64,000 nt of DNA, from positions 27,280,001 through 27,344,000 of the forward strand of contig OZ116708.1 of NCBI GenBank assembly GCA_964199315.1, read 5' to 3'. Positions 3,001 to 41,200 of the stretch are shown here, piece after piece (the stretch's first letter is position 1; every line of letters begins with the position of its first letter). This DNA is from Orbicella franksi (Eukaryota). Below the pieces are notes generated by a model. It was given only the letters and a program-made list of their open reading frames with translations, searched no databases and was not told the DNA's origin. Made by a program: the position numbers and the translations under genes.

Positions 3001-6000
3001 TGAGACCAAGGTCTTAAATGTCCCTGAATATTCAGCCCTGAAATTTTATCACATATAGGACTGTTGCCCAAAGATGAAAGTAATAAGTATTTTGTGACCT
3101 AATACATGTACAACTAAAATAATTTTGGAGGTACAGTATATGACTGTTTTTCTATTTTACACTGTACAGAAATCCTGTAACAATGCAGAAGATGAATGTC
3201 TACATTACAAATCCTTATATGAGAGATCGCAGCAGGAACTAAAAGACTTGGCTGAAAAGCACAAGCAGGTATTGAAAATGTCTTTGCACAGTCTAAATTT
3301 CAATAATTTGCAGTAATTTCTTGGAGACTATTTCTGTACTATTTCTTTACATGTGTGTCTGGTCTATACTACAGTAACTTTTCATAGGAAATGATTTGCA
3401 CCACGATTCATTTTAAACAAGTGTTAAAACTTGGGATTAGCATATTAATGAAGAATTGGTTTGTGCTTAACGTACATGTATTGAGTTATGGATGCGCAAG
3501 GGAAGTTTGCAGAGCATGAAAGAAGTGTAAGAGTTGGCAGCTCAAGGCAATAGCCACGAGCAACTCTTGCTTCTTGAGTGCTCTCCAAATTTCCCAAGTG
3601 CATCCATAACTTGATATATGCACAGCTTAAAGCATTCACCAATTCTTTTATAACATGGCGACAACACATTGAATGCTAAAACATCTTTTATTTGTGATTG
3701 ACTACTAAGTTCTCACAATGCATGGTGAAGGAAAACAAAGGTCATGAGGATCCTAACATGCCACAATCAGTTGAGCAACAGTTAAACAAAACGCTAAACC
3801 TGGTTTCTAAAATTGTCGATCGATGAAAACTTCACTCCTTTGAATTAATTATAATGAAAATGTAGGCAAACAAAGTAAAAATACTCAACGAAAAAGTAGA
3901 CAATTGAATACTCAAGTTATAGTAAATGTCTTAGCTTGGCAAAAGTCAAAGGCTCGAAGGAGGGTTTGGATTGCACACGCTATGTTATAGATGCACTTAT
4001 TCACCAAACATTCCTGTTGATTGAGTTATAAACACCATGGGCAGCAGCATTGTTGTCATCATTACCATTGTATTTGTGGTCATATTTGTCATGTATTCAG
4101 TTTAATGTGAATCAAAGCACATCCAGGGCTCGAAATTAACTTTTTCGTTCGGTAGCCAGGTGGTGACTAACGGAAAAATTTTGGTCGCCAGATCATAAAT
4201 TTTGTTCACCAACTTATTTTATAACTTACACAAGAACTTGATTTTATACGTTACTTTGCATGCAAGAAAAGTCACAGTTGAAGAGGGAAAACAATATAAG
4301 TAGAAACAACACAAGTAACACTTTAGTTATAAAGCTACCATTGTTCTCAGGTGATATGTCTCTGGTCCGAACTGGTGATGATTGTCTCCATAGTCATTTT
4401 AAATGAAGCGAAGCATAAAATGTTTCAAGTCTGTGGTTTTCATTGTGAGACAAACACGGGTCCTTGCGTATTTTCCCTTTGCTACTTCTTCGAAATGCCG
4501 TTCTTTATTTTCGACTTGCTTTCCTCGACACGTTTCGCTCACGTAATTCCTTCAACTGATTGGTAACTGCCTCCATTTTCACGGCAAATGAAAAGCACAC
4601 GGTGTTGAAGTATGCCTGCGATCCCAATTTCGGAAGGAGCCACTGAAACAATATGGCACGCTGTGAACGCAGTATCGACATACGTGTCGAAATACATTCA
4701 ATTTTTTTGAATATCTTGTAATATTCAGACACTATTTTACTGGGGACGGAAAGGTGAGTTGTATACTGGCCACCGTATCTGATTGATTTCATAGTATAAA
4801 GATTTAAAAACAAAACTTGTGTTGTGGTTTTCTTTAGTTTTCGGATAAAACACAAGTCGCCAGTGCTCAATTTTTGGTCACACTGGCGACCAGTGAGTCG
4901 CAATTTCGAGCCCTGACATTGTCATCATCATCTTTTTTAGGTTGATAACAGCCGGTTAGGCAACATACCAACCACTTGCAAAATATAAAGTAAAATTACC
5001 TAGTGTGCATGCTCGCTAATAATGTCAACCTCCGGCCAAATGCAGTGTGTATACTGCAATCTCCATCATTATAACTTTCCTCATCATTTAGATTATCATT
5101 ATTATAATAGTCATCAGCAGCATCATTTTCATTTCATAACTTGACAGAGATTACAAGAGATGCAAAGTCTTCATGATCAAGTTGAAGAAGCAGAAAGGAG
5201 ACACTCAGCCGTTGAAGGGCAGGTCAGTTGTGTCAATATGTCTCACTGCACAGTACCAAATGCTTGTAACACCATTTTCCTTTCCAAACAATCCAAGTGC
5301 ATTTACAGTGTATGGTAATGTTTTAGAACATATTAATGAAGGTAACCCTTTCAATTTCAAGAGAAAGCAACCATTACAATTTTCTCTAAGAATACCAATA
5401 GCCACATTTGACAAGAAAGTTGGTCAATCAGTCAGTACATGTAGGTCAACAGTTTGCATTATTTTATAAATTTCTCAGTAAGTCAGTCCCACTGTTCAAT
5501 TCAATTCATCATAAGGTCAGTTCATCCAGTAAACTTGTCAAGAGAGTCAGTGAATTCATTCTTTATTTGTTCATTCATTCTTTGTCATTTGTCAATTTGT
5601 CTCCGTTCCTATGTTCATTCGTTTTGTCATTTAATTACTTTGTTCAAAGCAATCCTATTTTATTGGTTCTTAGGCTGTTCAAGAGAAAACAGAATTTGAA
5701 ATAAGAATTAAAGAAGCACAGCTTCGTGAGGCTGCCTTAGCTGCTAAGGTTGGTTCACTGTGTTCATGTAATAAATAATGCAGCTTGTCAAATACAGGAC
5801 TATGAAAGTTTTGTACATATTTTGTCCTGAAACTGAACATTTTTCCCTTTGTTACTGCAGGCAGAATCTTTGCAGGCAGAATGTGATTTTACAAAAGAGC
5901 AGGTCACTGCAATGAAAGGTGAATGACATGTTGCTTTAATTTAAAAGAGATTAATTCATGTAGCAACAGAGAGACGTCTTGCAAATAATTTATATGCCAT

Positions 6001-26865: not shown

Positions 26866-28066
26866 TTGTGCGATCGCCGCTCTACCAACTTGTAGTCCCT
26901 AACTCTGTGAATCCACAGCCAGCATATTGAGTGTAAATATGTAGAAATTTAGGTATTCATTTATGGGTGATCTGTCACTCGCCAAGCGCTGGCAGTTTAC
27001 GAGGCACTTGAGATAACAAAAGCTTCAACACACGCCGTTGATTGGTGAGCGAGATAATCATTAATCACGTATGGCGAATGCAAATTTTACTGCGTAATTG
27101 AAATTAAAATTTAAATGTAGTCACGCTTTTGTTCAGCTCCGTTTCATGTTGTTCACACCTAGGCAGAATGCGTTCAGACTTTTACTTTGCTTTCGTACTT
27201 TTTACTTAAATAAGGAAGATTAATTACAATAATAAAACCGTGTATTCTACAAGCCCAAAACCTGTGGTATTGCTGAATTCTTTTACTCAGTTTCACATTC
27301 CATTACCAAAACTTAACTGAAATTCAATTAGTGAATTTACTTGCGAAATATTGCTATTTTAATCGAATCCCCAAGGTCCTCGTTTCTGAAAAGACACCAT
27401 CAAACAATATTCTGTTATTAATCGTTTTATCAATTCTCATCACTGTGCAATTAAATGCCAAATGACAATGCATATCATTTTCGTTCCCAGGTGTTTTCTC
27501 TTAGAAACTAAGGGAAAGCCGTGGGAACGAGTTTAATGCGCATCGCGCATCAGTAGTCGATGTCATAATAAAAAATTGACCCTAGTTGGCGTAGATATAT
27601 GGGTGGAACATTTCATAGAAAGAAATAAAACAGTTTTGATCGCAAAGATGCATCTCCTAATTTCTTGATTTATCCATTCAAGGTGGTCAAACGAGCTCTT
27701 TTCACGTGCGCGCACCATGCGTCACCTGTCAGGTCCCATCGCATTCCTCCCCAAGCGCGGGCTCATTTCCCAAAACAGCGGCTGGTAATCGAGCCTATTC
27801 CCTCCCGGCTTCCTTGAGCGTTTCTGATTATCTCTAGTTCCGGAGCGTTGCGAAGATAAGAGTCAACAGTGGACTAAATAAGCATACTTTATAAACGCGC
27901 TAGGCTATAATAAAAAACGCTGAATGAGTTCTGCTATTTTTCTGCTCGTTTGTTGCACTCTAGGTTCGCTGTGAGTTCTCTTCTTTTTCTGTTTTTTTTT
28001 TTTTTTATTTATTTTTTTTTCTCTCGTTTTTGTTTTTATTTTGTTTTTCTGCGAGCTGATATTTAT

Positions 28067-28160
28067 TAGCCTGCGTCGCAGACGGTCTAAACCGCCGGTC
28101 CGGCTGCAATGCACGACTTTATCGGGGATTTTATCACACGTCCGGCTGCAACGCAGCCTG
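28067..28160. mobile_element. hAT-like MITE, short internally deleted copy (left border of the array)
   Basis: Begins TAGCCTGCGTCGCAGACGGTCTAAACCGCC and ends CCGGCTGCAACGCAGCCTG; preceded by ATATTTAT (28059-28066). Confidence 0.75.
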
Positions 28161-28233
28161 TCTGCAGCCAAGTGGTTACATTTCCGAGCTTCGGTTCGGA
28201 AGGGCCGGCGTTCAGCGCCCGAAGGGGAACTCC
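28161..28233 (+). pseudogene. 5'-truncated, mutated copy of the small RNA gene (copy 1)
   Basis: Starts at TCTGCAGCCAAGTGG directly after a MITE end. It lacks GGAGTCCC, and the B box is mutated (GTTCAGCG). Confidence 0.6.
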
Positions 28234-28826
28234 AATTTTTGTTTTCGTATTTGTGTATTACCGAAGAGTTTTCTTTTTCATACAATTCTTTTTCCCCTTT
28301 GAAGTAAGTTAGCTGGTTAAAAACTTTTTTTAAAAAATGACATCCTGATCCTGGCTGATCGTAAAATACCCATCTAGCCATGCCTTTATTTCCTTTAAGC
28401 CCTCTTTCTTAGCTTCTAACCAATAGATGAACTCCTTGAAAAGTACGCCTCACATTTGGAACTGAATTTTTTTTCGGTTTGGAAAAGATGTAATAATGGT
28501 CTTCAAAATACTCTATATAACTGAGGCAAAGCTATTTAAAAAGCTTAAGGGTTTAGTTTGAATGCTTTTGAGCTCAGCCCAGAAATAAACCTTATAAGCT
28601 ATTGAAGCTTTCCTTTGGCAACTTATGGCCTGGATTGTTAAATAAAGGCGAACTACTATTGTTAGAAGAAAGACAATCGTTAAAGAGGCTACAAATTACA
28701 TAGAGATTAGTCTCCATTGGTTCTGTCATTTCTTTTACGGCTTATTTTTTTAAGGATGGATTAGCCTGTCAATAGAACTACTTGTTGTTCGTATAGGTAC
28801 CGTTAAATTTTCTAACTACGTCATAT

Positions 28827-28907
28827 GGAGTCCCTCTGTAGCCCAGTGGTTACATTTCCGAGCTTCGGTTCGGAAGGGCCGGCGTTCAACGCCCACAGAG
28901 GGACTCC
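28827..28907 (+). ncRNA. Candidate vault RNA-like Pol III RNA gene, copy 2 (first intact copy)
   Basis: 81 nt. A box TAGCCCAGTGG, B box GTTCAACGC, perfect 12-bp terminal stem GGAGTCCCTCTG/CAGAGGGACTCC, internal hairpin TTCCGAGC-TTCG-GTTCGGAA, followed by AATTTTT. Confidence 0.65.
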
Positions 28908-29503
28908 AATTTTTATTTTGGTATTTGTGTATTACTGAAGAGTTTTCTTTTTTATACAATTTCCTTTTATTCCGTTTAAACTAAGTTAGCCGGTTAAAAA
29001 CTATCAGTTTAAGAAAATGACATCCTAAACCTGGCTGATCGCAAAATACCCATCTAGCCATTCCTTTATTTGCTTTAAGCTTACTTTCTTAGCTTCTAAC
29101 CAGTAGGTGAAGACCTTGAAAAGTACGCATCACATTTGCAACTGAAATTTTTTTCGGTTTGGAAAAGATGTAATAATGGACTTCAAAATACATTATAACT
29201 GAGGCAAAGCTATTTAAAAGCTGAAGGGTTTACTTTGAATGCTTTTGAGCTCAGCCCAGAAATAAACCTCATAACCTATTGAAGCGTTCCTCTGGGAACT
29301 TATGGCCTGGATTGTTAAATAAAGGCGAACTACTATTGTTACAAGAAAGACAATCGTTACAGACGCTACAAATTACATAGAGGTTAGTCTCCATTGGTTC
29401 TGACCTTTCTTTTATGGCTAATTTTTTTAAGGATGGAGTGGGCTGTCAATAGAACTACTTGTTGTTCGTATAGGTACCGTTAAATTTTCTAACTACGTCA
29501 TAT

Positions 29504-29584
29504 GGAGTCCCTCTGTAGCCCAGTGGTTACATTTCCGAGCTTCGGTTCGGAAGGGCCGGCGTTCAACGCCCACAGGGGGACTCC
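29504..29584 (+). ncRNA. Candidate vault RNA-like Pol III RNA gene, copy 3
   Basis: Same 81-nt sequence (3' stem CAGGGGGACTCC, one G:U pair), followed by AACTTTT. Confidence 0.65.
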
Positions 29585-30173
29585 AACTTTTATTTTGGTA
29601 TTTGTGTATTACTGAAGAGTTTCTTTTTCATACAATTCTTTTTCCCCTTTGAAGTAAATTAGCCGGTTAAAAAGATTTTTTTAAAAAATGACGTCCTGAA
29701 CTTGGTCGATCGTAAAATACCCATCTAGCCATGCCTTTATTTGCTTTAAGCCCTCTTTCTTAGCTTCTAACCAATAGATGAAGACCTTGAAAAGTACACA
29801 TCACATTTGGAACTGAAATTTTTTTTGGTTTCGAAAGAATGGACTTCAAAATACTCTATAACTGAGGCAAAGCTATTTAAAAAGCTTAAGGGTTTAGTTT
29901 GAATGCTTTTGAACTCAGCCCAGAAATAAACCTTATAAGCTATTGAAACTTTCCTTTGGGAACTTATGGCCTGGATTGTTAAATAAAGGCGAACTACTTT
30001 TGTTAGAAGAAAGGCAATCGTTAGAAAGGCTACAAATTCCATAGAGATTAGTCTCCATTAGTTCTGTCATTTCTTTTGTGGCTTAATTTTTTTAAGGACG
30101 GATGGAGTAGGCTGTCAATAGAACTGCATTGTCGTGCGTATAGGTACCGTTAAATTTTCTTATTACGTCATAT

Positions 30174-30254
30174 GGAGTCCCTCTGTAGCCCAGTGGTTAC
30201 ATTTCCGAGCTTCGGTTCGGAAGGGCCGGCGTTCAACGCCCACAGGGGGACTCC
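30174..30254 (+). ncRNA. Candidate vault RNA-like Pol III RNA gene, copy 4
   Basis: Identical to copy 3, followed by AGTTTTT. Confidence 0.65.
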
Positions 30255-30845
30255 AGTTTTTGTTTTGGTATTTGTGTATTACTGAAGAGTTTTCTTTTTC
30301 ATACAATTCTTTTTCCTCTTTGAAGTAAGTTAGCCGGTTAAAAACTTTTTTAAAAAAATGACATCCTGAACCTGGCTGATCGTAAAATACCCATCTAGCC
30401 ATGCCTTTATTTGCTTTAAGCCCTCTTTCTTAGTTTCTAACCAATAGATGAAGACCTTGAAAAGTACGCATCACATTTGGAACTGAAAATTTTTTCGGTT
30501 TGGAAAAGATGTAATAATGGTCTTCAAAATACTCTATAACTGAGGCAAAGCTATTTAAAAAGCTTAAGGGTTTAGTTTGAATGCTTTTGAGCTCAGCCCA
30601 GAAATAAACCTTATAACCTATTGAAGCGTTCCTTTGGCAAATTATGGCTTGGATTGTTAAATAAAGGCGAACTACTTTTGTTAGAAGAAAGGCAATCGTT
30701 AGAGAGGCTACAAATTCCATAGAGATTAGTCTCCATTAGTTCTGTCATTTCTCTTATAGCTTATTTTTTAAGCATGGAGTAGGCTGTTAATAGAACTGCA
30801 TTGCTGTTCGTATAGGTACCGTTAGATTTTCTAACCACGTCATAT

Positions 30846-30926
30846 GGAGTCCCTCTGTAGCCCAGTGGTTGCATTTCCGAGCTTCGGTTCGGAAGGGCCG
30901 GCGTTCAACGCCCGAAGGGGGACTCC
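30846..30926 (+). ncRNA. Candidate vault RNA-like Pol III RNA gene, copy 5 (variant)
   Basis: A and B boxes intact; variants GGTTGC and CCCGAAGGGGG; followed by AATTTT. Confidence 0.55.
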
Positions 30927-31506
30927 AATTTTCGTTTTGGTATTTGTGTATTACTGAAAAGTTTTCTTTTTGATACAATTTTCTTTTTTTCCGTTTGAAG
31001 TAAGTTAGCCGGTTAAAAACTATTTTAAAAAATGACATCCTGAACCTGGCTGATCGTAAAATACCCATCTAGCCATGCCTTTATTTCCTTTAAGCCCTCT
31101 TTCTTAGCTTCTAACCAATAGGTGAAGACCTTGAAAAGTACGCATCACATTTGGAACTGAAATTTTTTTGGTTTCGAAAGAATGGACTTCAAAATGCTCT
31201 GTAACTGAGGCAAAGCTATTTAAAAAGCTTAAGGGTTTAGTTTGAATGCTTTTGAGCGCAGCCCAGAAATAAACCTTATAAGCTATTGAAGCTTTCCTCG
31301 GGCAACTTATGGCCTGGATTGTTAAATAAAGGCGAACTACTATTGTTAGAAGAAAGACAATCGTTAGAGAGGCTACAAATTACATATAGGTTAGTCTCCA
31401 TTAGTTCTGTCATTTTATAGCTTATTTTTTAAGGATGGAGTAGGCAGTCAATAGAGGTACATTGTTGTGCGTATAGGTACTGATAAATTTTCTAAACACG
31501 TCATAT

Positions 31507-31587
31507 GGAGTCCCTCTGTAGCCCAGTGGTTACATTTCCGAGCTTCGGTTCGGAAGGGCCGGCGTTCAACGCCCACAGGGGGACTCC
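31507..31587 (+). ncRNA. Candidate vault RNA-like Pol III RNA gene, copy 6
   Basis: Identical to copy 3, followed by AACTTTT. Confidence 0.65.
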
Positions 31588-32169
31588 AACTTTTATTTTG
31601 GTATTTGTGTATTACTGAAGAGTTTCTTTTTCATACAATTCTTTTTCCCCTTTGAAGTAAATTAGCCGGTTAAAAAGATTTTTTTAAAAAATGACGTCCT
31701 GAACTTGGCTGATCGTAAAATACTCATCTAGCCATGCCTTTATTTGCTTTAAGCCCTCTTTCTTAGCTTTTAACCAATAGATGAAGACCTTGAAAAGTAC
31801 ACATCACATTTGGAACTGAAATTTTTTTGGTTTCGAAAGAATGGACTTCAAAATACTCTATAACTGAGGCAAAGATATTTAAAAAGCTTAAGGGTTTAGT
31901 TTAATGCTTTTGAGCTCAGCCCAGAAATAAACCTTATAAGCTATTGAAACTTTCCTTTGGGAACTTATGGCCTGGATTGTTAAATAAAGGCGAACTACTA
32001 TTGTAAGAAGAAAGACAATCGTTAGAAAGGCTACAAATTCCATAGAGATTAGTCTCCATTAGTTCTGTCATTTCTTTTATGACTTATTTTTTTAAGCATG
32101 GAGTAGGCTGTCAATAGAACTGCATTGTCGTGCGTATAGGTACCGTTAAATTTTCTTATCACGTCATAT

Positions 32170-32250
32170 GGAGTCCCTCTGTAGCCCAGTGGTTACATTT
32201 CCGAGCTTCGGTTCGGAAGGGCCGGCGTTCAACGCCCACAGGGGGACTCC
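32170..32250 (+). ncRNA. Candidate vault RNA-like Pol III RNA gene, copy 7
   Basis: Identical to copy 3, followed by AGTTTTT. Confidence 0.65.
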
Positions 32251-32839
32251 AGTTTTTGTTTTGGTATTTGTGTATTACTGAAGAGTTTTCTTTTTCATAC
32301 AATTCTTTTTCCCCTTTGAAGTAAGTTAGCCGGTTAAAAACTTTTTTAAAAAAATGACATCCTGAACCTGGCTGATCGTAAAATACCCATCTAGCCATGC
32401 CTTTATTTGCTTTAAGCCCTCTTTCTTAGCTTCTAACCAATAGGGGAAGACCTTGAAAAGTACGCATCACATTTGGAACTCAGTGAAATTTTTTTTGGTT
32501 TCGAAAGAATGAACTTCAAAATACTCTATAACTGAGGCAAAGCTATTTAAAAAGCTTGAGGGTATAGTTTGAATGCTTTTGAGCTCAGCCCAGAAATAAA
32601 CCTTATAAGCTATTTAAACTTTCCTTTGGCAACTTGTGGCATGGATTGTTAAATAAAGACGAACTACTTTTGTTAGAAGAAAGACAATCGTTAGAGGGCC
32701 TACAATTATTACATAGAGATTAGTCTCCATTGTATATGTCATTTCTTTTATAGCTTATTTTTTAAGGATGGAGTAGGCAGTCAATAGAACTGCATTGTCG
32801 TGCGTATAGGTACCGTTAAATTTTCTTATTACGTCATAT

Positions 32840-32920
32840 GGAGTCCCTCTGTAGCCCAGTGGTTACATTTCCGAGCTTCGGTTCGGAAGGGCCGGCGTTC
32901 AACGCCCACAGGGGGACTCC
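32840..32920 (+). ncRNA. Candidate vault RNA-like Pol III RNA gene, copy 8
   Basis: Identical to copy 3, followed by AATTTTT. Confidence 0.65.
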
Positions 32921-33325
32921 AATTTTTATTTTGGTATTTGTGTATTACTGAAGTGTTTTCTTTTTCGTAAAATTTTCTTGTTTTCCGTGTAAAGTAAGTT
33001 AGCCGGTTAAAAAGTTTTTTTGAAAAATGACATCCTGAACCTGGCTGATTGTAAAATGCCCATTTAACCATGCCTTTATTTGCTTTAAGCCCTCTTTCTT
33101 AGCTTCTAACCAATAGGTGAAGGCCTTGAAAAGTACGCATCACATTTGAAACTGAAATTTTTTTCGGTTTGGAAAAGATGTAATAATGGACTTCCAAATA
33201 CCCTATAACTGAGGCAAAGCCATTTAAAACGCTTAAGGGTTTAGGCTGTCAATACAACTACATTGCATGTGCATATAGGTAGCGTTAAATTTTCTAACCA
33301 CGTCATATTGAGTCCCTCTTTTGCC

Positions 33326-33506
33326 TAGCTTGCGTCGCAGACAGTCTAAACCGCCAGTATAAGAAGACGCGTAAGAAACTAGCCAATCAGAAATGGATAC
33401 AGAAATTCGTGTATCTATGCGGGAAATCAGAACAAGCTTTTGGGAGCCGTTTAGCAGACGGACTATATCGGAGATTTTATGATCCGTCCGGCTGCAATGC
33501 AGGCTA
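33326..33506. mobile_element. hAT-like MITE, same family (right border of the array)
   Basis: Begins TAGCTTGCGTCGCAGACAGTCTAAACCGCC and ends CCGGCTGCAATGCAGGCTA; followed by ATATTTAT (33507-33514). Confidence 0.8.
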
Positions 33507-35238
33507 ATATTTATTCGAGCTCGTAAAAGCGAACGCCCGTGGGGAAACGCAAAGGAAATAGAGGGGTTGACAAGCTAACAAAGGTGACGGTATGCAAAGG
33601 TTCTCTTTAAATGTGTGCATATAGTTTAAATCTGAGAACAAAGCAATCAATGTCTGAAACGACGTGCTTCAAGTTTGTTTGAAGACTTGATCAGTTCAAT
33701 TTTTTCGCATACGGAAACCTGATTCTTGTTTCAAATCTTCTCGTCACTCAATCGAACAGATACGCGACCTTCAGCGTGCTACGACTGCTCGGATTTTTGG
33801 AAATGTTGCAGGGAATGTTAAAGCAGGGTTTTGCACAGTCGACTGACCAGGGACGGGAGGCTCTATATGGTAGCCCCTTCCGCCCCCTCCCCAACCCCCC
33901 CTCCCTCTAAATGCGCGCGCAGGTCAAAAGTAGTCCGAGGTAAACCTTCGGTGGCACCTTGCTTGTCAGGTCCAATGTGGGTTCAAGGGACTGTATAGAT
34001 CGTGCAAACAAGAAGAAAAATATATGAACGTCAACAATAGATTATGATCCAGATCATATTCTCTTGACGCCAAACGCTTTTCATTGAAGACAGCAACTTT
34101 TCTTTATTTTTTACGTGAATATTTTTTCTCAAATTGAACACGACCAAGAGATATTTTCTAACCTGAGAAAGAAGCTCATTTGATGAAGCATTTCTGAAAA
34201 GAGCATTTCCATAAAAGTAAAACTCTAGCATCTATTTTTTCCGTTTATTTCCCTGTTTGTAGAAGGAAGTTATAATTCAAATGGTTTATTCTGTCTTTGC
34301 ATGGTTTTCATACATACGCCGAAAGAGAGTGAAAAAATGTGGCTAGCCCGTAACCCCACAGAACAAAGCACTTCATTGGTTTATTAAACAAGCCGGATCA
34401 CACTATTCCCAAACGCACAAACAACAATTAAGATTCCAGAGAGGCGGTGGTACAATGAGTAAAATGGCGGGAAAAAGCTTGCAGTGACTAAAATTCGTGA
34501 CGTACTTGTTCACCATTGGTCCAATCTTATTTTCCATATTCATGATGAGTCTTGCTGATGTGAGGTGTTTGTTTGTCATTCAGAGAAGTTCGCGGACTGG
34601 TAGGATGTGTATCGTTCCCTTCTTCACGAGAAGAAACTTCAAAGACGATTTACTGAAGGCGTTTGGAGAAGAAGTAGTTTCACATTGTGTAAATCTATGG
34701 TAGGTTGCTATTTCCTGGCATTTTAGTTCAAATTGGTGCGAAGTATTCCGACAAATGCTACTCCAAATCTGACCACGTACGCTTGTTAACTCGGTTTACG
34801 TTTCGCGTCGAAGCTCACAATGCCTCATGTCTAAGCCACGACTAAAACTTGTAATGAAATAACACTTGAATCATTCGAGACGGTTTGTTGAACTTATTTT
34901 GTTTTCTTGAGAATTTTTCGTTCGTCCCGCAAGTTGCTCCAAGATGATAAATGATTCCGTTGAGAAACAGGGGGAAAATATTACACTGATTTGTTCTAAT
35001 TTATAGTTATTGTTGATCACCGTTGACACGTTTGGATTTGCTCCTTCCACTTTCAGAAAGAAAAGTCCTGAAGAGAGCAAAGTCGGTGGACAACAAGGAA
35101 CAAGTCAACTTTACATTAACTAGAGGAGGACACAAAGATAAGAACATTATTTGTAAATTTAGTTCAGTTTACAGTGAAACCTTTCCAATAGAAATGGCAG
35201 CGTTTTTACATGACAATTTTTGGAGTTAATTTCAAAAC

Positions 35239-36850: not shown

Positions 36851-37904
36851 CAATTTTTTTCGTTCAACACGATACCCAGACAATAATCTTTAGTATCTCA
36901 CTGAATATTACATTATATTTCTCGAAGGTAACATGGCAAGCCAATTTTTCGTTTGTTTTGTTTTTTGTTCATCGGCAAGTAACTAATCGGATCGGTTTAA
37001 TTTTAACTTGATACGCGAGTAACTTCGGGATTTTTTTTTTTTTTTTTTGATTTTATAGTTCAAATCAACTTGCTGGCTTGCCTATTTACCTTCTTGATAT
37101 ATAATGTAGTGTAATAACATTACGTGAAATAGTGTGTCCTAAAACGACGAGCAGCTGGAAATCCGTTTACAGAAATGAGAAGATCGGGCAAAAATTAGCA
37201 GATTAAAATTAGTTCAACTACAACGTTTCAGCACACTGGTTTGGATGTTGAGACGAAGAGAACATTTTTTGACTCGTTATGATCAAGAGAGCTTGTATAG
37301 TTGGGCTCAATTTACCCAGCGATATGAACTTTCTTAATTGTTACGATTTAAAAATGTTTTCATCTTCTCAGTGTTCAACCTAGTGCGTTCAAAAGTTGCA
37401 GTTGTGCTAATTTTTATCTACTCTTCTCATTTCTGTATATTTCTCGCTGTTTGGCGTTTTAGGACATACTATTTTATGTAATGTTAGGGTGTAATACTCC
37501 ATCTTGTGCAAAAATTTTATCTCAAATTTTTGTATAAGACGGTGAATCACATTTTTGGCGGGAAAATAATTCAAGGGGGTACCCCCTTAAAATTTTTGTC
37601 AAAAAAGTTGCCAGGGGAAACGCTGTGCAAATTTTTTCCAATTTTCCCGCCAAAAGTCTTAGTATATATAGGGCAAATTTTTTGATGACACCTTTGTAAT
37701 TAATTTAATGGAAAATCACTTAATTAATTATTCAAGTTGAATAAAACTAACTTGCTTGTATTTATTGTTTGAATGAAATATTTTATTAAAGATAATAAAG
37801 AATACAAAGAAGACATTTGAACTTTACTGACTTCTGTTAATAGCAATATAAAATAACAGAGACCAGAAAAAGACTAAATAACTTTTATTGATATACTTGA
37901 AAAA

Positions 37905-38205
37905 AAAAAAAAAAATGGCGCATGCGTATTTTGGGCGCCGTATTTTTTCTAAGATTTTTTGCGGGAAAAATAAAAATTTTAAACGGAATACATAAAGTAT
38001 AAGACGATTTTTTTAACAAAAAAAATTGGCGCATGCGTATTTTGAGCGCCCGTATTTTTTCTAAGTTTTTTGGCGGGAAAAATAAAAATTTTAAACGGAG
38101 TACATAAAGTATAAGACGATTTTTTAAACAAAAAAAAAAAAAATTGGCGCATGCGTATTTTAAGCGCCCGTATTTTTTCTAAGTTTTTTGGCGGGAAAAT
38201 TAGGA
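37905..38205. repeat. Tandem repeat, ~115-bp unit x ~2.6
   Basis: TGGCGCATGCGTATTTT...GCGGGAAAA...AAAGTATAAGACGATTT repeats at ~37916, 38028 and 38146. Confidence 0.9.
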
Positions 38206-41200
38206 ATTTTGACATGGGTCTTCACGACTAATAATCTGCGCCAAATTTCAAACAAGAGCGTTAAAGCGCGAAGAAAACTTTTAGTTACAAACTTATTCCA
38301 GCTACACAGTGTACGAGTTTCCTGTGAGAAAACGTTTATTATTCGAAAAGCTTAAGAACTTGGTAAGATTACAATTTTGAGACTTTGGCTCGTGTCTCAA
38401 ACAAGAAAATAAATCGTTTCCGAACCCTACAGAAAGCTGCCACGTTAAAATTTCGAGACTTTGGCTCGTGTATCAAACAAGACAATTGGAATCAGTAAAT
38501 AAATTCTATGAGCCGCAGAACACAGCGAAAATAAACCTGTTTGAAACTAGAACAAATGTCCTCCGTCTTGTTCTTACTTATCCGAAAAAAAGAAAAGTCC
38601 CTAGCGATCTTAAATGTCTATCCTACTTTGCGTCGTTGGGTTATCTTCAATGTTTTGTCCTTATTGTTTCCTCCAGCGTCTGTCTTCAGAGTATTTAGTT
38701 CCCGTTTGCCAACTTCAGTGTCTCTGTGTTTATCCTTTTGCTGTCTTGCTCGTAACGCCAGAAATCCTGCAAGAAAATTTAAAATGTTTACTTCACATGC
38801 CTTGTAATGTTTATGTATTAAACCAAAGCAATTGCTTCATGTTCTCTTGACAAACATTCATCTTCGGCTCCTTCAGATACGCGTTTGAATATTTTCGCAA
38901 TATTTTTCCTTGTAGCATTTTAACTTTCACAAGTAATTTACACAATTTGAAAACAAACTTTGTCTGCTTATTTACATTCGAGTAAGACGCAGTGCAAGCT
39001 TGAAATATTAACTCTTCACACTGATTTCCGAGTGATCAAAAAGTTATTTCCTCTTAAAATATCAACACAATGTCAAGCAAACAAGTATAGGGAATAAAAA
39101 AAAATTAATCAACCAAGGAATACTGTCTTGCTATACCACAATATTCTGGGAACTGACATTGAAGAGACATGAACAGCAAACAGTCGGCAGAAATGAAATT
39201 CTGAACAACGAATTAAATCAATTTTAATTACCTAAAGTTATCGTGTTATGGATGGCTCCATTACAGCTTCACAGTATCGTCATTTGTACCTGAAAAGAAA
39301 AAAAAAGTTATTTGAACGACTTGTCTTCACCTGTTCTTATCGCGACAAAAAACACGGCTAGTTTTTGGACAACACTTCTAGACAACACTTCTCGACGAAA
39401 CACTTTACAGTATACACAGAACGTACCAGTTCTGTTGTTTGCATATTCGGTAAAAATGCACGGAAGAAATAAGCAAAGGAGCGTAACAACTCCAAACTGC
39501 GAACAAATTCCTAGTAAATATTCTCACTTCGTTGTAATATTTCCGCCACAAAGTAAAAATATCTCGATTTGACCGACACATTCCAGGATATTAATACGAT
39601 GGACAACAAAAGAATAACGCTTGATACATGCTTGTTTATTCGACTGTTTCTAACAGATTTTGCACAAGGCTTTTCTCTACAAAATAAAACCAAACGTTTC
39701 GTGTAATAAAAACAGTACTTACGTAAAAATATCGCGGATCCGTTAGTAGGATTGATCATGATAATATAGAATATGGCGTTCCCTGGTAAAAAGTATTTAA
39801 AAAAAACATCCTATATTATCAGTTCTTACCTTGAGGAGAATTCAAATTCCATAAGTTGACAATACACCGTGACATCTTTGTTTGAAGCACGAGCTTCAAG
39901 TCAAGTTCTTGTTGCAGGTATTTGTGTTTCATAACAACTTCAAACGACAGGATCTGAAGCCTGATACTTTCTCGTAGCAATGAGCCAAGTTACCGGTAGA
40001 TCTCTGTAAATTAAAGTTTTAAAGGTGAACAGTTAACATACGGGCGATAAAAAGCAATGCTACATACCGTTATCAGATTTCTAATTTGCAATTTAAAAAT
40101 TTTCAAACATTTGCAGCCACGCACTAGAGTCTTTCTTGTTGCGCGGGATATTTTAAATTTTCCCTCACACTATTTTTGGTTTTTTGACAGGAAAATTGAC
40201 ATTAGAAACGACACAGTTAACTATCTCCAAAAAAAAAAACTTGCAACCTGTAAAAACGGTAACCAAAAAGGAAAACCCCCGGTGGGAGAGGGTGAAGTGT
40301 ATCCTTTCATGGCCACAATAAAAATAAGACAACAAACAAACAAACAAACTATAAATGTTACATTGTGTGTGCCGGGGAAGCCTTGCGTGGAAAAGCCTTA
40401 AAGTGTTTATCGACTGCTAATGACGTCAAATTGGTTGCCATGGCATTGTCAAAAGATGTTAACCCAGCACACCCTTTATCCTTTTGAGATAAATAACCTT
40501 TAAAACTCATCAGTGGACGTTTTTCGTTTAGGAAATATTTTTGTCCCCACGACAAAATATGTTTTTGAAATATTTTGTAGGTGTGGCACAGAGCCACCTA
40601 ACTTTCATGAATTTAAGATTGCTCTGAAAATTTGACAAATTTATCGACAAAACAACAATATTTCACAAAGCAAAACTTTTACCGAGTATTTTCAAGGTTG
40701 TTAGCCCCAAAAGTTCAAAACAAAGGTATGCTGATCCCTTGAAGTCAGCTCACTCATGATGATGGCAGATCATTTCTAACATGGCATTCACTAGTGTTTT
40801 TAAATCCCAGTTCTCTAAAGCCTATAAAATTAATAAAATAGTGCTCTACAACCATCTCAGTTGAAATCCTGGCTTTTAGTCATGAACAAAAAAACTGATT
40901 AGTTTTCACTGTTTATGTGTTTAATTCTGTGATTTTCTTCAATTTCCAAAACAAAATCTGGCCATGCAGACAGTTTGTTGATTTTTGGTAAAATATGTCA
41001 TTTCCAAGTGCCAAGTAATGCTTAACAGCCACTCTGTCAAATTTAAAAGGCAAGTGTGCATGCCAGCAAAGACAAGAGGCAATGGAATTTCACTGAAGGA
41101 ATATTCACAAGAGAATTCACAGTCACTTTTGCTTTTTTTAATCACACTGGCATCAAAAAATATCAAAAAACTGACTTTTTTTTTTAATGTGCTCAGATTA

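What the first reader, a model, noticed from the sequence alone, without database searches (positions are those of the whole stretch)
28161..33325. Tandem array of 7 intact (+1 split) candidate vault-RNA genes in a probably non-bilaterian genome
Seen: every ~670-bp unit contains an 81-nt block GGAGTCCCTCTG-TAGCCCAGTGG-TTAC-AT-TTCCGAGC-TTCG-GTTCGGAA-GGGCCGGC-GTTCAACGC-CCA-CAGGGGGACTCC followed within 3 nt by T4-T5. It has an exact A box (TRGCNNAGYGG), an exact B box (GTTCRANNC), a 12-bp 5'/3' panhandle and an 8-bp hairpin capped by the extra-stable C(UUCG)G tetraloop. The block is identical in 5 of 7 intact copies while the spacers accumulate many substitutions and indels. The one change in copy 2 turns a G:U into an A:U pair. 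Established: vault RNAs are ~80-150-nt Pol III transcripts with this A box - variable domain - B box - panhandle - U-tail layout, and they often occur in small clusters. The human vtRNA 5' motif TAGCTCAGCGGTTAC (recalled) matches TAGCCCAGTGGTTAC here at 13/15. The human GCGG/CCGC pairing appears here as a compensatory GTGG/CCAC. Inference: this is an amplified, selectively conserved vtRNA-like (or new Pol III) RNA gene cluster. vtRNAs are well described mainly in deuterostomes, so a coral-like array would be notable.
Basis: partly seen in the sequence, partly recalled or inferred. Interest (0 to 1): 0.9.

Follow-up and report, generated by a model that had tools for sequence, protein, structure and literature searches.

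The report
Coral tRNA-like Pol III gene array
The array is real, but it is one small outpost of a very abundant reef-coral tandem-repeat family whose unit carries a tRNA-like small-RNA gene built for RNA polymerase III; nothing tested identifies it as vault RNA, and whether the RNA is made or what it does is still open.

Summary
There are seven full copies, one split copy, a 661-677 bp period, A and B boxes, a UUCG hairpin, a 13-bp terminal stem and T4-T5 runs. The 81-nt block is the least variable 81-nt stretch of the unit: 4 variable columns against a median of 17 (Fisher p=2e-5).

The vault-RNA reading is not supported. Rfam gives no RF00006 match even at E<=10, for this subfamily or for the major one. 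tRNA scores 11 bits, below the threshold of 29.

A coral-metagenome scan returned 80 coral contigs with about 215 copies. Most lie in short tandem arrays with periods of about 290, 470, 670 or 800 bp. The copies share about 75 nt of upstream sequence with a TATA-like element, an 81-83 nt body, and a T-run present in 92% of copies. They range from intact to badly decayed and show no compensatory covariation. Shared upstream sequence and the lack of a body or tail exclude a SINE.

Two paralogous types keep the same terminal-stem sequence but carry different central hairpins.

RNA-library signal mirrors the DNA signal, so transcription is unproven.

The array here sits between two MITE copies with an outer 8-bp target duplication.

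The scan had already met this family elsewhere in the same genome (s1-234094, s1-237911).

Closest known analogues are Xenopus OAX/satellite I, newt PolIII/TAN and rodent 4.5SH arrays.

The parts
28059..28066 (.). Left copy of the outer 8-bp target-site duplication, ATATTTAT
   Evidence: Read directly. The identical octamer lies at 33508-33515.
28067..28160 (+). Short (~94 bp) MITE copy with both termini; an internal-deletion form of the right-hand copy
   Evidence: Direct repeats D8 and D9 match the two ends of the 33326-33507 element. The imperfect ~19-bp terminal inverted repeat was read.
28161..28233 (+). 3' part (from about nt 9) of the RNA gene split by the MITE. It is mutated: 3 mismatches in the core and a broken terminal stem.
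   Evidence: 67.5 bits against 102 for intact copies
28827..28907 (+). Gene copy 2. It has one change, G74>A, which makes U9.G into U9-A.
   Evidence: 103.4 bits
29469..29474 (+). TATA-like element TATAGG at -35..-30 of copy 3. The same element precedes every copy, and TTAAATTTT follows at -24..-16.
   Evidence: Family D4; family-wide upstream conservation
29504..29584 (+). Gene copy 3, the reference copy. A box 29516-29526, UUCG hairpin 29533-29552, B box 29561-29569, 13-bp terminal stem formed by nt 1-13 and 69-81.
   Evidence: (MFE -44.5 kcal/mol, z -5.35)
29588..29596 (+). Terminator-like TTTTATTTT, starting 3 nt after copy 3
   Evidence: 92% of 180 full-length family copies have T4 within 10 nt downstream.
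30174..30254 (+). Gene copy 4, identical to copy 3
30846..30926 (+). Gene copy 5, a variant. A26>G, and ACA>GAA at nt 69-70, which breaks two pairs at the base of the terminal stem. The first T-run is interrupted (TTTTCGTTTT).
   Evidence: 94.9 bits
31507..31587 (+). Gene copy 6, identical to copy 3
32170..32250 (+). Gene copy 7, identical to copy 3
32840..32920 (+). Gene copy 8, identical to copy 3. Its spacer carries an internal deletion of about 200 bp.
   Evidence: (D4 spacing 469)
33309..33325 (+). Degenerate 5' fragment (gene nt 1-17) of the split gene, abutting the right-hand MITE
   Evidence: Last member of family D4; read
33326..33507 (+). Long (~182 bp) MITE copy
   Evidence: D8, D9
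33508..33515 (.). Right copy of the outer 8-bp target-site duplication, ATATTTAT

Best explanation
The stretch 28161-33325 is one short array of a very abundant reef-coral tandem-repeat gene family. Each unit (about 290-800 bp; 661-677 bp here) carries a tRNA-derived or tRNA-like gene laid out for RNA polymerase III. The gene has a TATA-like element about 30-35 bp upstream, an internal A box (nt 13-23), an internal B box (nt 58-66) and a T-run 0-4 nt after the body.

Inferred mechanism:
- TFIIIC binds the two boxes and places TFIIIB on the upstream element.
- Pol III starts near G+1 and stops in the T-run, giving an RNA of about 85-90 nt.
- The RNA folds into a compact cloverleaf-like shape: a 13-bp terminal stem, a D-arm-like A-box region, an 8-bp UUCG-capped hairpin in place of the anticodon arm, and a shortened T-arm. 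It ends in a U-tail.
- The long terminal duplex would block tRNA-type end processing and stabilise the RNA.

Copies multiply at the DNA level by unequal crossing-over. Array pieces with arbitrary end points are dispersed to new sites. At this locus the array arrived together with two flanking MITE copies. Many copies then decay.

I think the RNA is most likely a lineage-specific abundant small RNA of the 4.5SH/OAX kind, with unknown function. It is not a demonstrated vault RNA.

Shown: the sequence anatomy, the family, its abundance, and the relative constancy of the gene.
Inferred: transcription, the RNA ends, stability and function.
For: Anatomy and fold.

Family:
- 80 coral contigs hold about 215 copies.
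- 65 of 83 locus-strands hold two or more copies, with period peaks at about 290, 470, 670 and 800 bp.

Conservation:
- It peaks from -75 to +83 across the family (majority fraction 0.8-0.99) and falls to 0.4-0.8 downstream.
- T4 lies within 10 nt downstream in 166 of 180 copies.
- The hairpin, which is not a promoter element, is as conserved as the A and B boxes (0.93-0.97).
- In this array the gene has 4 of 81 variable columns and the spacer 129 of 539 (p=1.9e-5). The gene is the least variable 81-nt window, while whole units are 87-97% identical.

Paralogues: types in L017 and L047 keep the terminal-stem sequence, the homologous upstream region, the T-run and the overall architecture, but have different central hairpins.

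Abundance: in DNA runs of two other coral species, the summed depth of the core is 10-35 times that of this spacer.

Precedents:
- Cnidarian ncRNA genes in tandem arrays (PMC11067881).
- Hundreds of tandem 4.5SH genes with TATA-like boxes (PMC7279448).
- OAX and PolIII/TAN repeats (PMC10702118).

An independent follow-up on another piece of this genome reached the same reading (s1-234094).
Against: No discrete transcript was shown.
- In RNA run X13 the core-to-spacer depth ratio is about 9, no higher than in the DNA runs (12-36). That run also holds a 679-nt contig spanning a whole unit, which fits DNA carry-over or read-through.
- A poly(A) library gave only 2 partial reads in 10 million records.

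There is no compensatory covariation within the family. 91.2% of cells are paired, against 91.1% in shuffles (112 of 500 shuffles reach the observed value). A C.A mismatch at pair 9-73 is common (28 of 85).

Copy scores run continuously from 112 down to 28 bits, as in a decaying repeat.

At the allelic contig L075 the second gene copy differs at 4 of 81 positions, about as much as its spacer.

In this array the 75 nt upstream are no more constant than the rest of the spacer.

The constancy of the gene could come from gene conversion among thousands of shared cores rather than from selection.
Confidence: 0.6

Rival explanations
1. The units are a satellite-like repeat that happens to contain a relic tRNA-derived Pol III gene. 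The arrays expand and decay neutrally. Any transcription is incidental, and the RNA has no function.
For: There is a continuous decay spectrum of copies.
There is no covariation beyond shuffles.
Most copies are unique sequences: 85 distinct among about 115.
Units turn over between haplotypes.
Arrays start and end at arbitrary phases of the unit.
The RNA-library signal is proportional to the DNA signal.
Against: The gene is the least variable part of the unit in this array.
Family-wide conservation peaks on the promoter region plus the gene.
T-runs are retained in 92% of copies.
Three paralogous types keep the same architecture with different helices.
Confidence: 0.27
2. The genes encode the coral vault RNA, or a vault-RNA-like RNA bound by TEP1 and MVP.
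For: The layout is shared with vault RNAs: A box, variable centre, B box, terminal stem, U-tail, and 81-83 nt length.
Paralogues with conserved ends and variable centres recall vtRNA paralogues.
Cnidarians have MVP, and vtRNA similarity outside the boxes is slim (PMC3762200). In 2009 vtRNAs were largely unknown beyond deuterostomes (PMC2655684).
Against: RF00006 gives no match at E<=10 on either subfamily and none at gathering score in the window.
The same model finds 3-4 low-copy candidates, not listed among the tandem arrays, in Hydractinia.
Copy number here is orders of magnitude above any known vtRNA locus.
The sequence resemblance is confined to the generic A box.
Confidence: 0.1
3. The copies are heads of a tRNA-derived SINE, spread by retroposition.
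For: The promoter is tRNA-like and the copy number is high. Two poly(A) RNA reads match the core and then continue into unlike sequence.
Against: The 45-75 nt upstream of the gene are conserved in nearly all copies. The T-run follows the 81-83 nt body directly. There is no body, no LINE-derived part and no simple-repeat tail. Copies sit in phase in tandem units.
Confidence: 0.02
4. They are genuine tRNA genes in a tandem cluster.
For: There is a weak tRNA-model alignment (11.4 bits). ARAGORN calls the type-2 paralogue in L017 tRNA-Cys. tRNA tandem arrays exist in cnidarians.
Against: ARAGORN finds no tRNA in the window.
The RF00005 score is far below the gathering score of 29, and E is 9.
The central hairpin has a 4-nt loop, so there is no anticodon loop.
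The 13-bp terminal stem leaves no acceptor end.
The L017 copies get no Rfam tRNA match at E<=1.
Confidence: 0.01

Closest known systems
Xenopus OAX / satellite I and newt PolIII/TAN repeats (tRNA-related, Pol III-transcribable tandem repeats; PMC10702118)
   Same: Tandem units of a few hundred bp, each containing a tRNA-related segment with a Pol III promoter. High copy number. No matching SINE is known.
   Different: A different lineage (anthozoan coral) and an unrelated sequence. The coral gene has a long terminal stem and a UUCG hairpin in place of the anticodon arm. The family comes as many short dispersed arrays with several unit lengths and at least three paralogous RNA types. Transcription has not yet been shown.
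Rodent 4.5SH RNA genes (PMC7279448)
   Same: A lineage-specific small Pol III RNA encoded by hundreds of genes, each inside a tandem repeat unit. Internal A and B boxes are combined with a TATA-like upstream element. A T-run terminator is present.
   Different: 4.5SH derives from 7SL/B1, not from a tRNA. Its units are 4-5 kb. Its expression and nuclear role are established, whereas nothing is known here.
Vault RNA (Rfam RF00006)
   Same: Pol III gene of 80-150 nt, with an A box near the 5' end, a B box near the 3' end, paired termini and a U-tail. Paralogues differ in the centre.
   Different: No covariance-model match. Thousands of copies in arrays, against 1-4 genes. No link to vault proteins has been tested.
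Tandem arrays of tRNA, snRNA and 5S genes in cnidarians (Hydractinia, Nematostella; PMC11067881)
   Same: Small RNA genes are repeated tens to hundreds of times, with spacers of several hundred nt that are similar to one another, in a cnidarian genome.
   Different: Those arrays encode recognisable housekeeping RNAs. [quoted passage not shown]

Membership tests
Vault RNA (RF00006) | Match to the Rfam Vault covariance model | tested here: not met
   No hit at gathering score in 64 kb. No hit at E<=10 on a 141-nt slice with copy 3 or on a 161-nt slice with a consensus copy of the major subfamily.
Vault RNA (RF00006) | Pol III gene with internal A and B boxes, an upstream TATA-like element and a T-run terminator | tested here: met
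   Motifs read. Upstream element and T-run are conserved family-wide. This is sequence evidence only. The feature is shared with many other Pol III genes.
Vault RNA (RF00006) | 80-150 nt RNA with paired 5' and 3' ends and a variable central domain | tested here: met
   81-83 nt body with a 13-bp terminal stem. Types 2 and 3 have the same ends and different centres.
Vault RNA (RF00006) | Physical association with the vault particle (MVP/TEP1) | not testable with these tools
   Needs vault purification or immunoprecipitation. MVP is reported in cnidarians (PMC3762200).
Vault RNA (RF00006) | Low copy number (one to a few genes) | tested here: not met
   About 215 copies on 80 metagenome contigs. 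Core depth is 10-35 times that of this spacer in DNA runs. Other arrays exist in the same genome. Hydractinia RF00006 hits number 3-4.
Vault RNA (RF00006) | Expressed as a discrete small RNA | tested here: inconclusive
   RNA-run contigs hold the gene, but at the same core-to-spacer ratio as DNA. The poly(A) library gave 2 partial reads. No small-RNA library was available.
tRNA (RF00005) | Cloverleaf with a 7-nt anticodon loop, recognised by tRNA finders | tested here: not met
   ARAGORN finds 0 genes in the window. RF00005 scores 11.4 bits against a gathering score of 29. The central hairpin has a tetraloop.
tRNA-derived SINE | Unrelated 5' flanks; head followed by a body and a tail; target-site duplications | tested here: not met
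   Upstream sequence is conserved in nearly all copies. The T-run follows the 81-83 nt body directly. Copies sit in phase in tandem units.
tRNA-related Pol III tandem-repeat families (OAX/satellite I, PolIII/TAN; functional analogue: 4.5SH arrays) | Head-to-tail units, each with a tRNA-like segment carrying A and B boxes; many copies | tested here: met
   tRNA relatedness rests on the weak RF00005 alignment and on the more tRNA-like type-2 paralogue, which has a canonical T-arm.
tRNA-related Pol III tandem-repeat families (OAX/satellite I, PolIII/TAN; functional analogue: 4.5SH arrays) | Transcribed by Pol III in vitro or in vivo | not testable with these tools
   Needs run-off transcription, Pol III ChIP or inhibitor tests. 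The read data are uninformative.

The most novel reading that the evidence does not exclude
The arrays encode a real, abundantly expressed class of coral small RNAs. It would be a superfamily with at least three paralogous types, which share one conserved terminal-stem sequence and the A and B boxes but carry different central hairpins. The RNAs would act through a common protein partner, in the manner of vault, Y or 4.5S RNAs. This class could be the still unidentified anthozoan vault RNA.
Probability: 0.3. Interest if true: 0.7.

Novelty: new member of a known kind. Interest (0 to 1): 0.45.

Why it matters
If the RNA is made, reef corals carry an undescribed Pol III small RNA encoded by hundreds to thousands of genes. 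It would rank among the most abundant non-ribosomal transcription units in these genomes, and it would be a candidate for the RNA partners of conserved ribonucleoproteins that remain unknown in non-bilaterians.

If it is not made, the family is still a clear new example of a tRNA-derived gene turning into a satellite-like repeat. It is also a large pool of TFIIIC-type sites that genome annotators should mask, and should not call vault RNA or tRNA.

The covariance model built here (R1) gives a direct way to survey other anthozoan genomes.

Tried and rejected
- Rfam at gathering score over the whole window found nothing.
- Rfam at E<=10 on single copies of both subfamilies gave only chance-level miRNA, CRISPR and sRNA hits plus tRNA at 11 bits.
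- ARAGORN on the window found none. ARAGORN on 60 loci made only the loose tRNA-Cys calls in L017, and Rfam does not back those calls.
- TRF missed the array because its longest period is 500.
- RNAalifold on the family alignment dropped the terminal stem and kept only an A-box hairpin. The explicit pair count showed no covariation, so I make no claim of structure support from within-family variation.
- Read laying did not show a discrete transcript.
- A search for common array termini, which would indicate a transposon carrying the gene, found that boundaries fall at arbitrary phases of the unit.
- The MITE terminus occurs in only one other locus, L075, which is the same genomic site.
- Literature searches for the exact motifs and for tRNA-derived coral satellites found nothing.
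- A possible tRNA-Sec or tRNA-Arg origin was considered from the long D-stem-like hairpin and the UUCG loop. I dropped it as untestable here.

Full report
**1. The observation**

- The 56-nt core of the block occurs eight times on the + strand with at most three mismatches, against none expected by chance.
- A covariance model built later from the wider family finds exactly these eight copies and nothing else in the window.
- Full copies start at 28827, 29504, 30174, 30846, 31507, 32170 and 32840. Spacing is 661-677 bp.
- Five copies are identical.
- Copy 5 has three changes, and two of them open the base of the terminal stem.
- The A box, the B box, the UUCG-capped 8-bp hairpin and the T4-T5 runs 2-3 nt after the block are all present as described.
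- The terminal stem is 13 bp rather than 12.
- The RNA folds far better than shuffled sequence: -44.5 kcal/mol, z = -5.35.
- Sequencing-run labels identify the source as a reef coral. At least four species labels hold the block.

**2. Is the block held constant?**

- Whole units are only 87-97% identical to one another.
- The gene has 4 variable columns in 81, against 129 in 539 for the spacer (Fisher p = 1.9e-5).
- It is the least variable 81-nt window of the unit. The median window has 17 variable columns and the best non-overlapping window has 10.
- In this array the 75 nt upstream are no more constant than the rest of the spacer.
- The constancy is therefore real. It could come from selection, or from gene conversion with the many other copies of the core in the genome.

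**3. What it is not**

- Vault RNA: Rfam gives no family at gathering score in the window.
  - With permissive filters and E<=10 on a 141-nt slice there is no Vault (RF00006) match, only a chance-level tRNA alignment of 11.4 bits against a threshold of 29.
  - The same holds for a consensus copy of the major subfamily.
  - RF00006 does detect 3-4 low-copy candidates in the cnidarian Hydractinia (PMC11067881).
- tRNA: ARAGORN finds none in the window.
- SINE: nearly every copy elsewhere has the same 45-75 nt upstream and a T-run directly after the 81-83 nt body. There is no body or tail.

**4. The family**

One scan of metagenome contigs returned 82 loci. Eighty are coral contigs and two are bacterial chance hits.

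The covariance model finds about 215 forward-strand copies on them. Scores run continuously from 112 down to 28 bits. 65 of 83 locus-strands hold two or more copies, with periods clustering near 290, 470, 670 and 800 bp.

In long contigs the arrays are short (2-9 units) and embedded in unique sequence. They begin and end at arbitrary phases of the unit. This argues against a transposon with fixed ends.

Across the family, conservation is highest from about -75 to +83 and lower downstream. Within the RNA:

| Region | Conservation (majority fraction) |
|---|---|
| A box | 0.97 |
| Central hairpin | 0.93-0.97 |
| GGGC segment | 0.97 |
| B box | 0.96 |
| Terminal stem | 0.88-0.93 |

T4 lies within 10 nt downstream in 166 of 180 full-length copies.

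The upstream consensus has a TATA-like ATATAGG at about -34..-28 (-35..-30 in the window's subfamily), followed by TTAAATTT.

In DNA runs of two other coral species, the summed depth over gene nt 7-50 is 10-35 times that of this array's spacer. Loose ends show the other subfamilies.

Earlier notes of this scan record a ~24-unit array and a four-gene cluster elsewhere in the same genome. An independent follow-up reached the same reading as mine.

**5. Evidence for and against an RNA-level function**

Against:
- Within the family there is no compensatory covariation. 91.2% of cells are paired, against 91.1% in shuffles.
- A C.A mismatch is common at one stem position.
- Most copies are unique.
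- The allelic contig L075 is nearly identical to the window through the flank, the MITE and the truncated copy. It then carries a different second unit whose gene differs at 4 of 81 positions.

For:
- Besides the constancy described above, two paralogous types turned up as by-catch.
- Type 2 (five copies in L017; ARAGORN calls four of them tRNA-Cys, which Rfam does not support) and type 3 (two copies in L047) share several features with type 1. These are the terminal-stem sequence, a homologous upstream region and the T-run.
- Each has a long central hairpin at the same place, with a different sequence in each type.
- Type 2 also has a canonical T-arm.
- This supports a tRNA origin and hints at a conserved architecture, but it rests on only three types.

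**6. Transcription**

Many RNA libraries hold the block.

| Run | Type | Result |
|---|---|---|
| X13 | RNA | Core-to-spacer depth ratio about 9; also contains a 679-nt contig spanning a whole unit |
| DNA runs | DNA | Core-to-spacer depth ratio 12-36 |
| Poly(A) raw-read run | RNA | 2 partial reads in about 10 million records |

The result fits DNA carry-over and says nothing about a non-polyadenylated 85-nt RNA. Expression is therefore undecided.

**7. How the array got here**

- The array lies between two copies of a MITE, about 94 bp and about 182 bp long.
- The whole composite is flanked by the octamer ATATTTAT on both sides (28059-28066 and 33508-33515).
- The inner junctions split one RNA gene and duplicate gene nt 9/10-17.
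- Two routes fit. One is composite transposition of MITE-array-MITE. The other is integration of an array circle by recombination between MITEs.

**8. Verdict**

The array is a member of an abundant coral tandem-repeat family built on a tRNA-like, Pol III-type small-RNA gene. The closest known analogues are Xenopus OAX/satellite I, newt PolIII/TAN (PMC10702118) and the tandem 4.5SH genes of rodents (PMC7279448). The background is that cnidarian genomes tend to keep small-RNA genes in arrays (PMC11067881).

Vault-RNA identity failed the only sequence test available and fails on copy number. The layout is compatible, MVP exists in cnidarians, and vtRNA similarity outside the boxes is slim (PMC3762200). 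I therefore keep that reading at about 0.1.

No paper in the searchable library contains the motifs.

Noticed in passing
window 28059-33515: The whole array is bracketed by two direct MITE copies (about 94 bp and about 182 bp, imperfect ~19-bp terminal inverted repeats) and an outer 8-bp duplication, ATATTTAT. The inner junctions split one RNA gene, with gene nt 9/10-17 present on both sides. This fits composite transposition or integration of an array circle through MITE-MITE recombination.
   Followed up: partly
L075:1-1512 (- strand) and L082: These metagenome contigs are the same genomic site as the window's left and right junctions. L075 is almost identical through the flank, the MITE and the truncated copy (2 substitutions plus a poly-T indel in about 1 kb). 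It then diverges by about 6-7%, because its second unit is a different unit. So unit content turns over between haplotypes or close species.
   Followed up: partly
L017:1844-1924, 2303-2383, 3468-3548, 4329-4409, 5135-5215: A paralogous 'type 2' gene lies in the same array as two type-1 copies. It has the same terminal-stem sequence, a homologous upstream region and a T-run. It also has a canonical T-arm and a different 10-bp central hairpin. ARAGORN labels four of the copies tRNA-Cys(gca), but Rfam tRNA gives no match at E<=1.
   Followed up: partly
L047, - strand, two copies about 660 bp apart (CM hits at 3303-3392 and 3962-4050): A 'type 3' gene of 87-88 nt has the same ends and A-box region. 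Its A-box hairpin is extended by one C-G pair, its central hairpin is different, and an extra AU-rich hairpin lies before a shifted B-box-like motif.
   Followed up: partly
family consensus, about 25-35 nt downstream of the T-run (e.g. L059, L069, L081): A conserved downstream motif, TGTTGGACTCCATTGAT, repeats the last seven bases of the RNA (GGACTCC). It has diverged in the window's subfamily. Its meaning is unknown.
   Followed up: no
L017:2835-2950: A long, nearly perfect hairpin of about 116 nt gives sub-threshold plant miRNA-family hits in Rfam (36 bits against 100). It is probably a small inverted-repeat element.
   Followed up: no
window 37901-38210: Tandem repeat with a 112-bp period, 2.7 copies, 88% matches, A/T-rich with GCGCATGCG cores.
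   Followed up: no
window 27984-28048: A 65-nt T-rich tract lies immediately left of the insertion site of the MITE-array composite. It varies in length between the window and L075.
   Followed up: no
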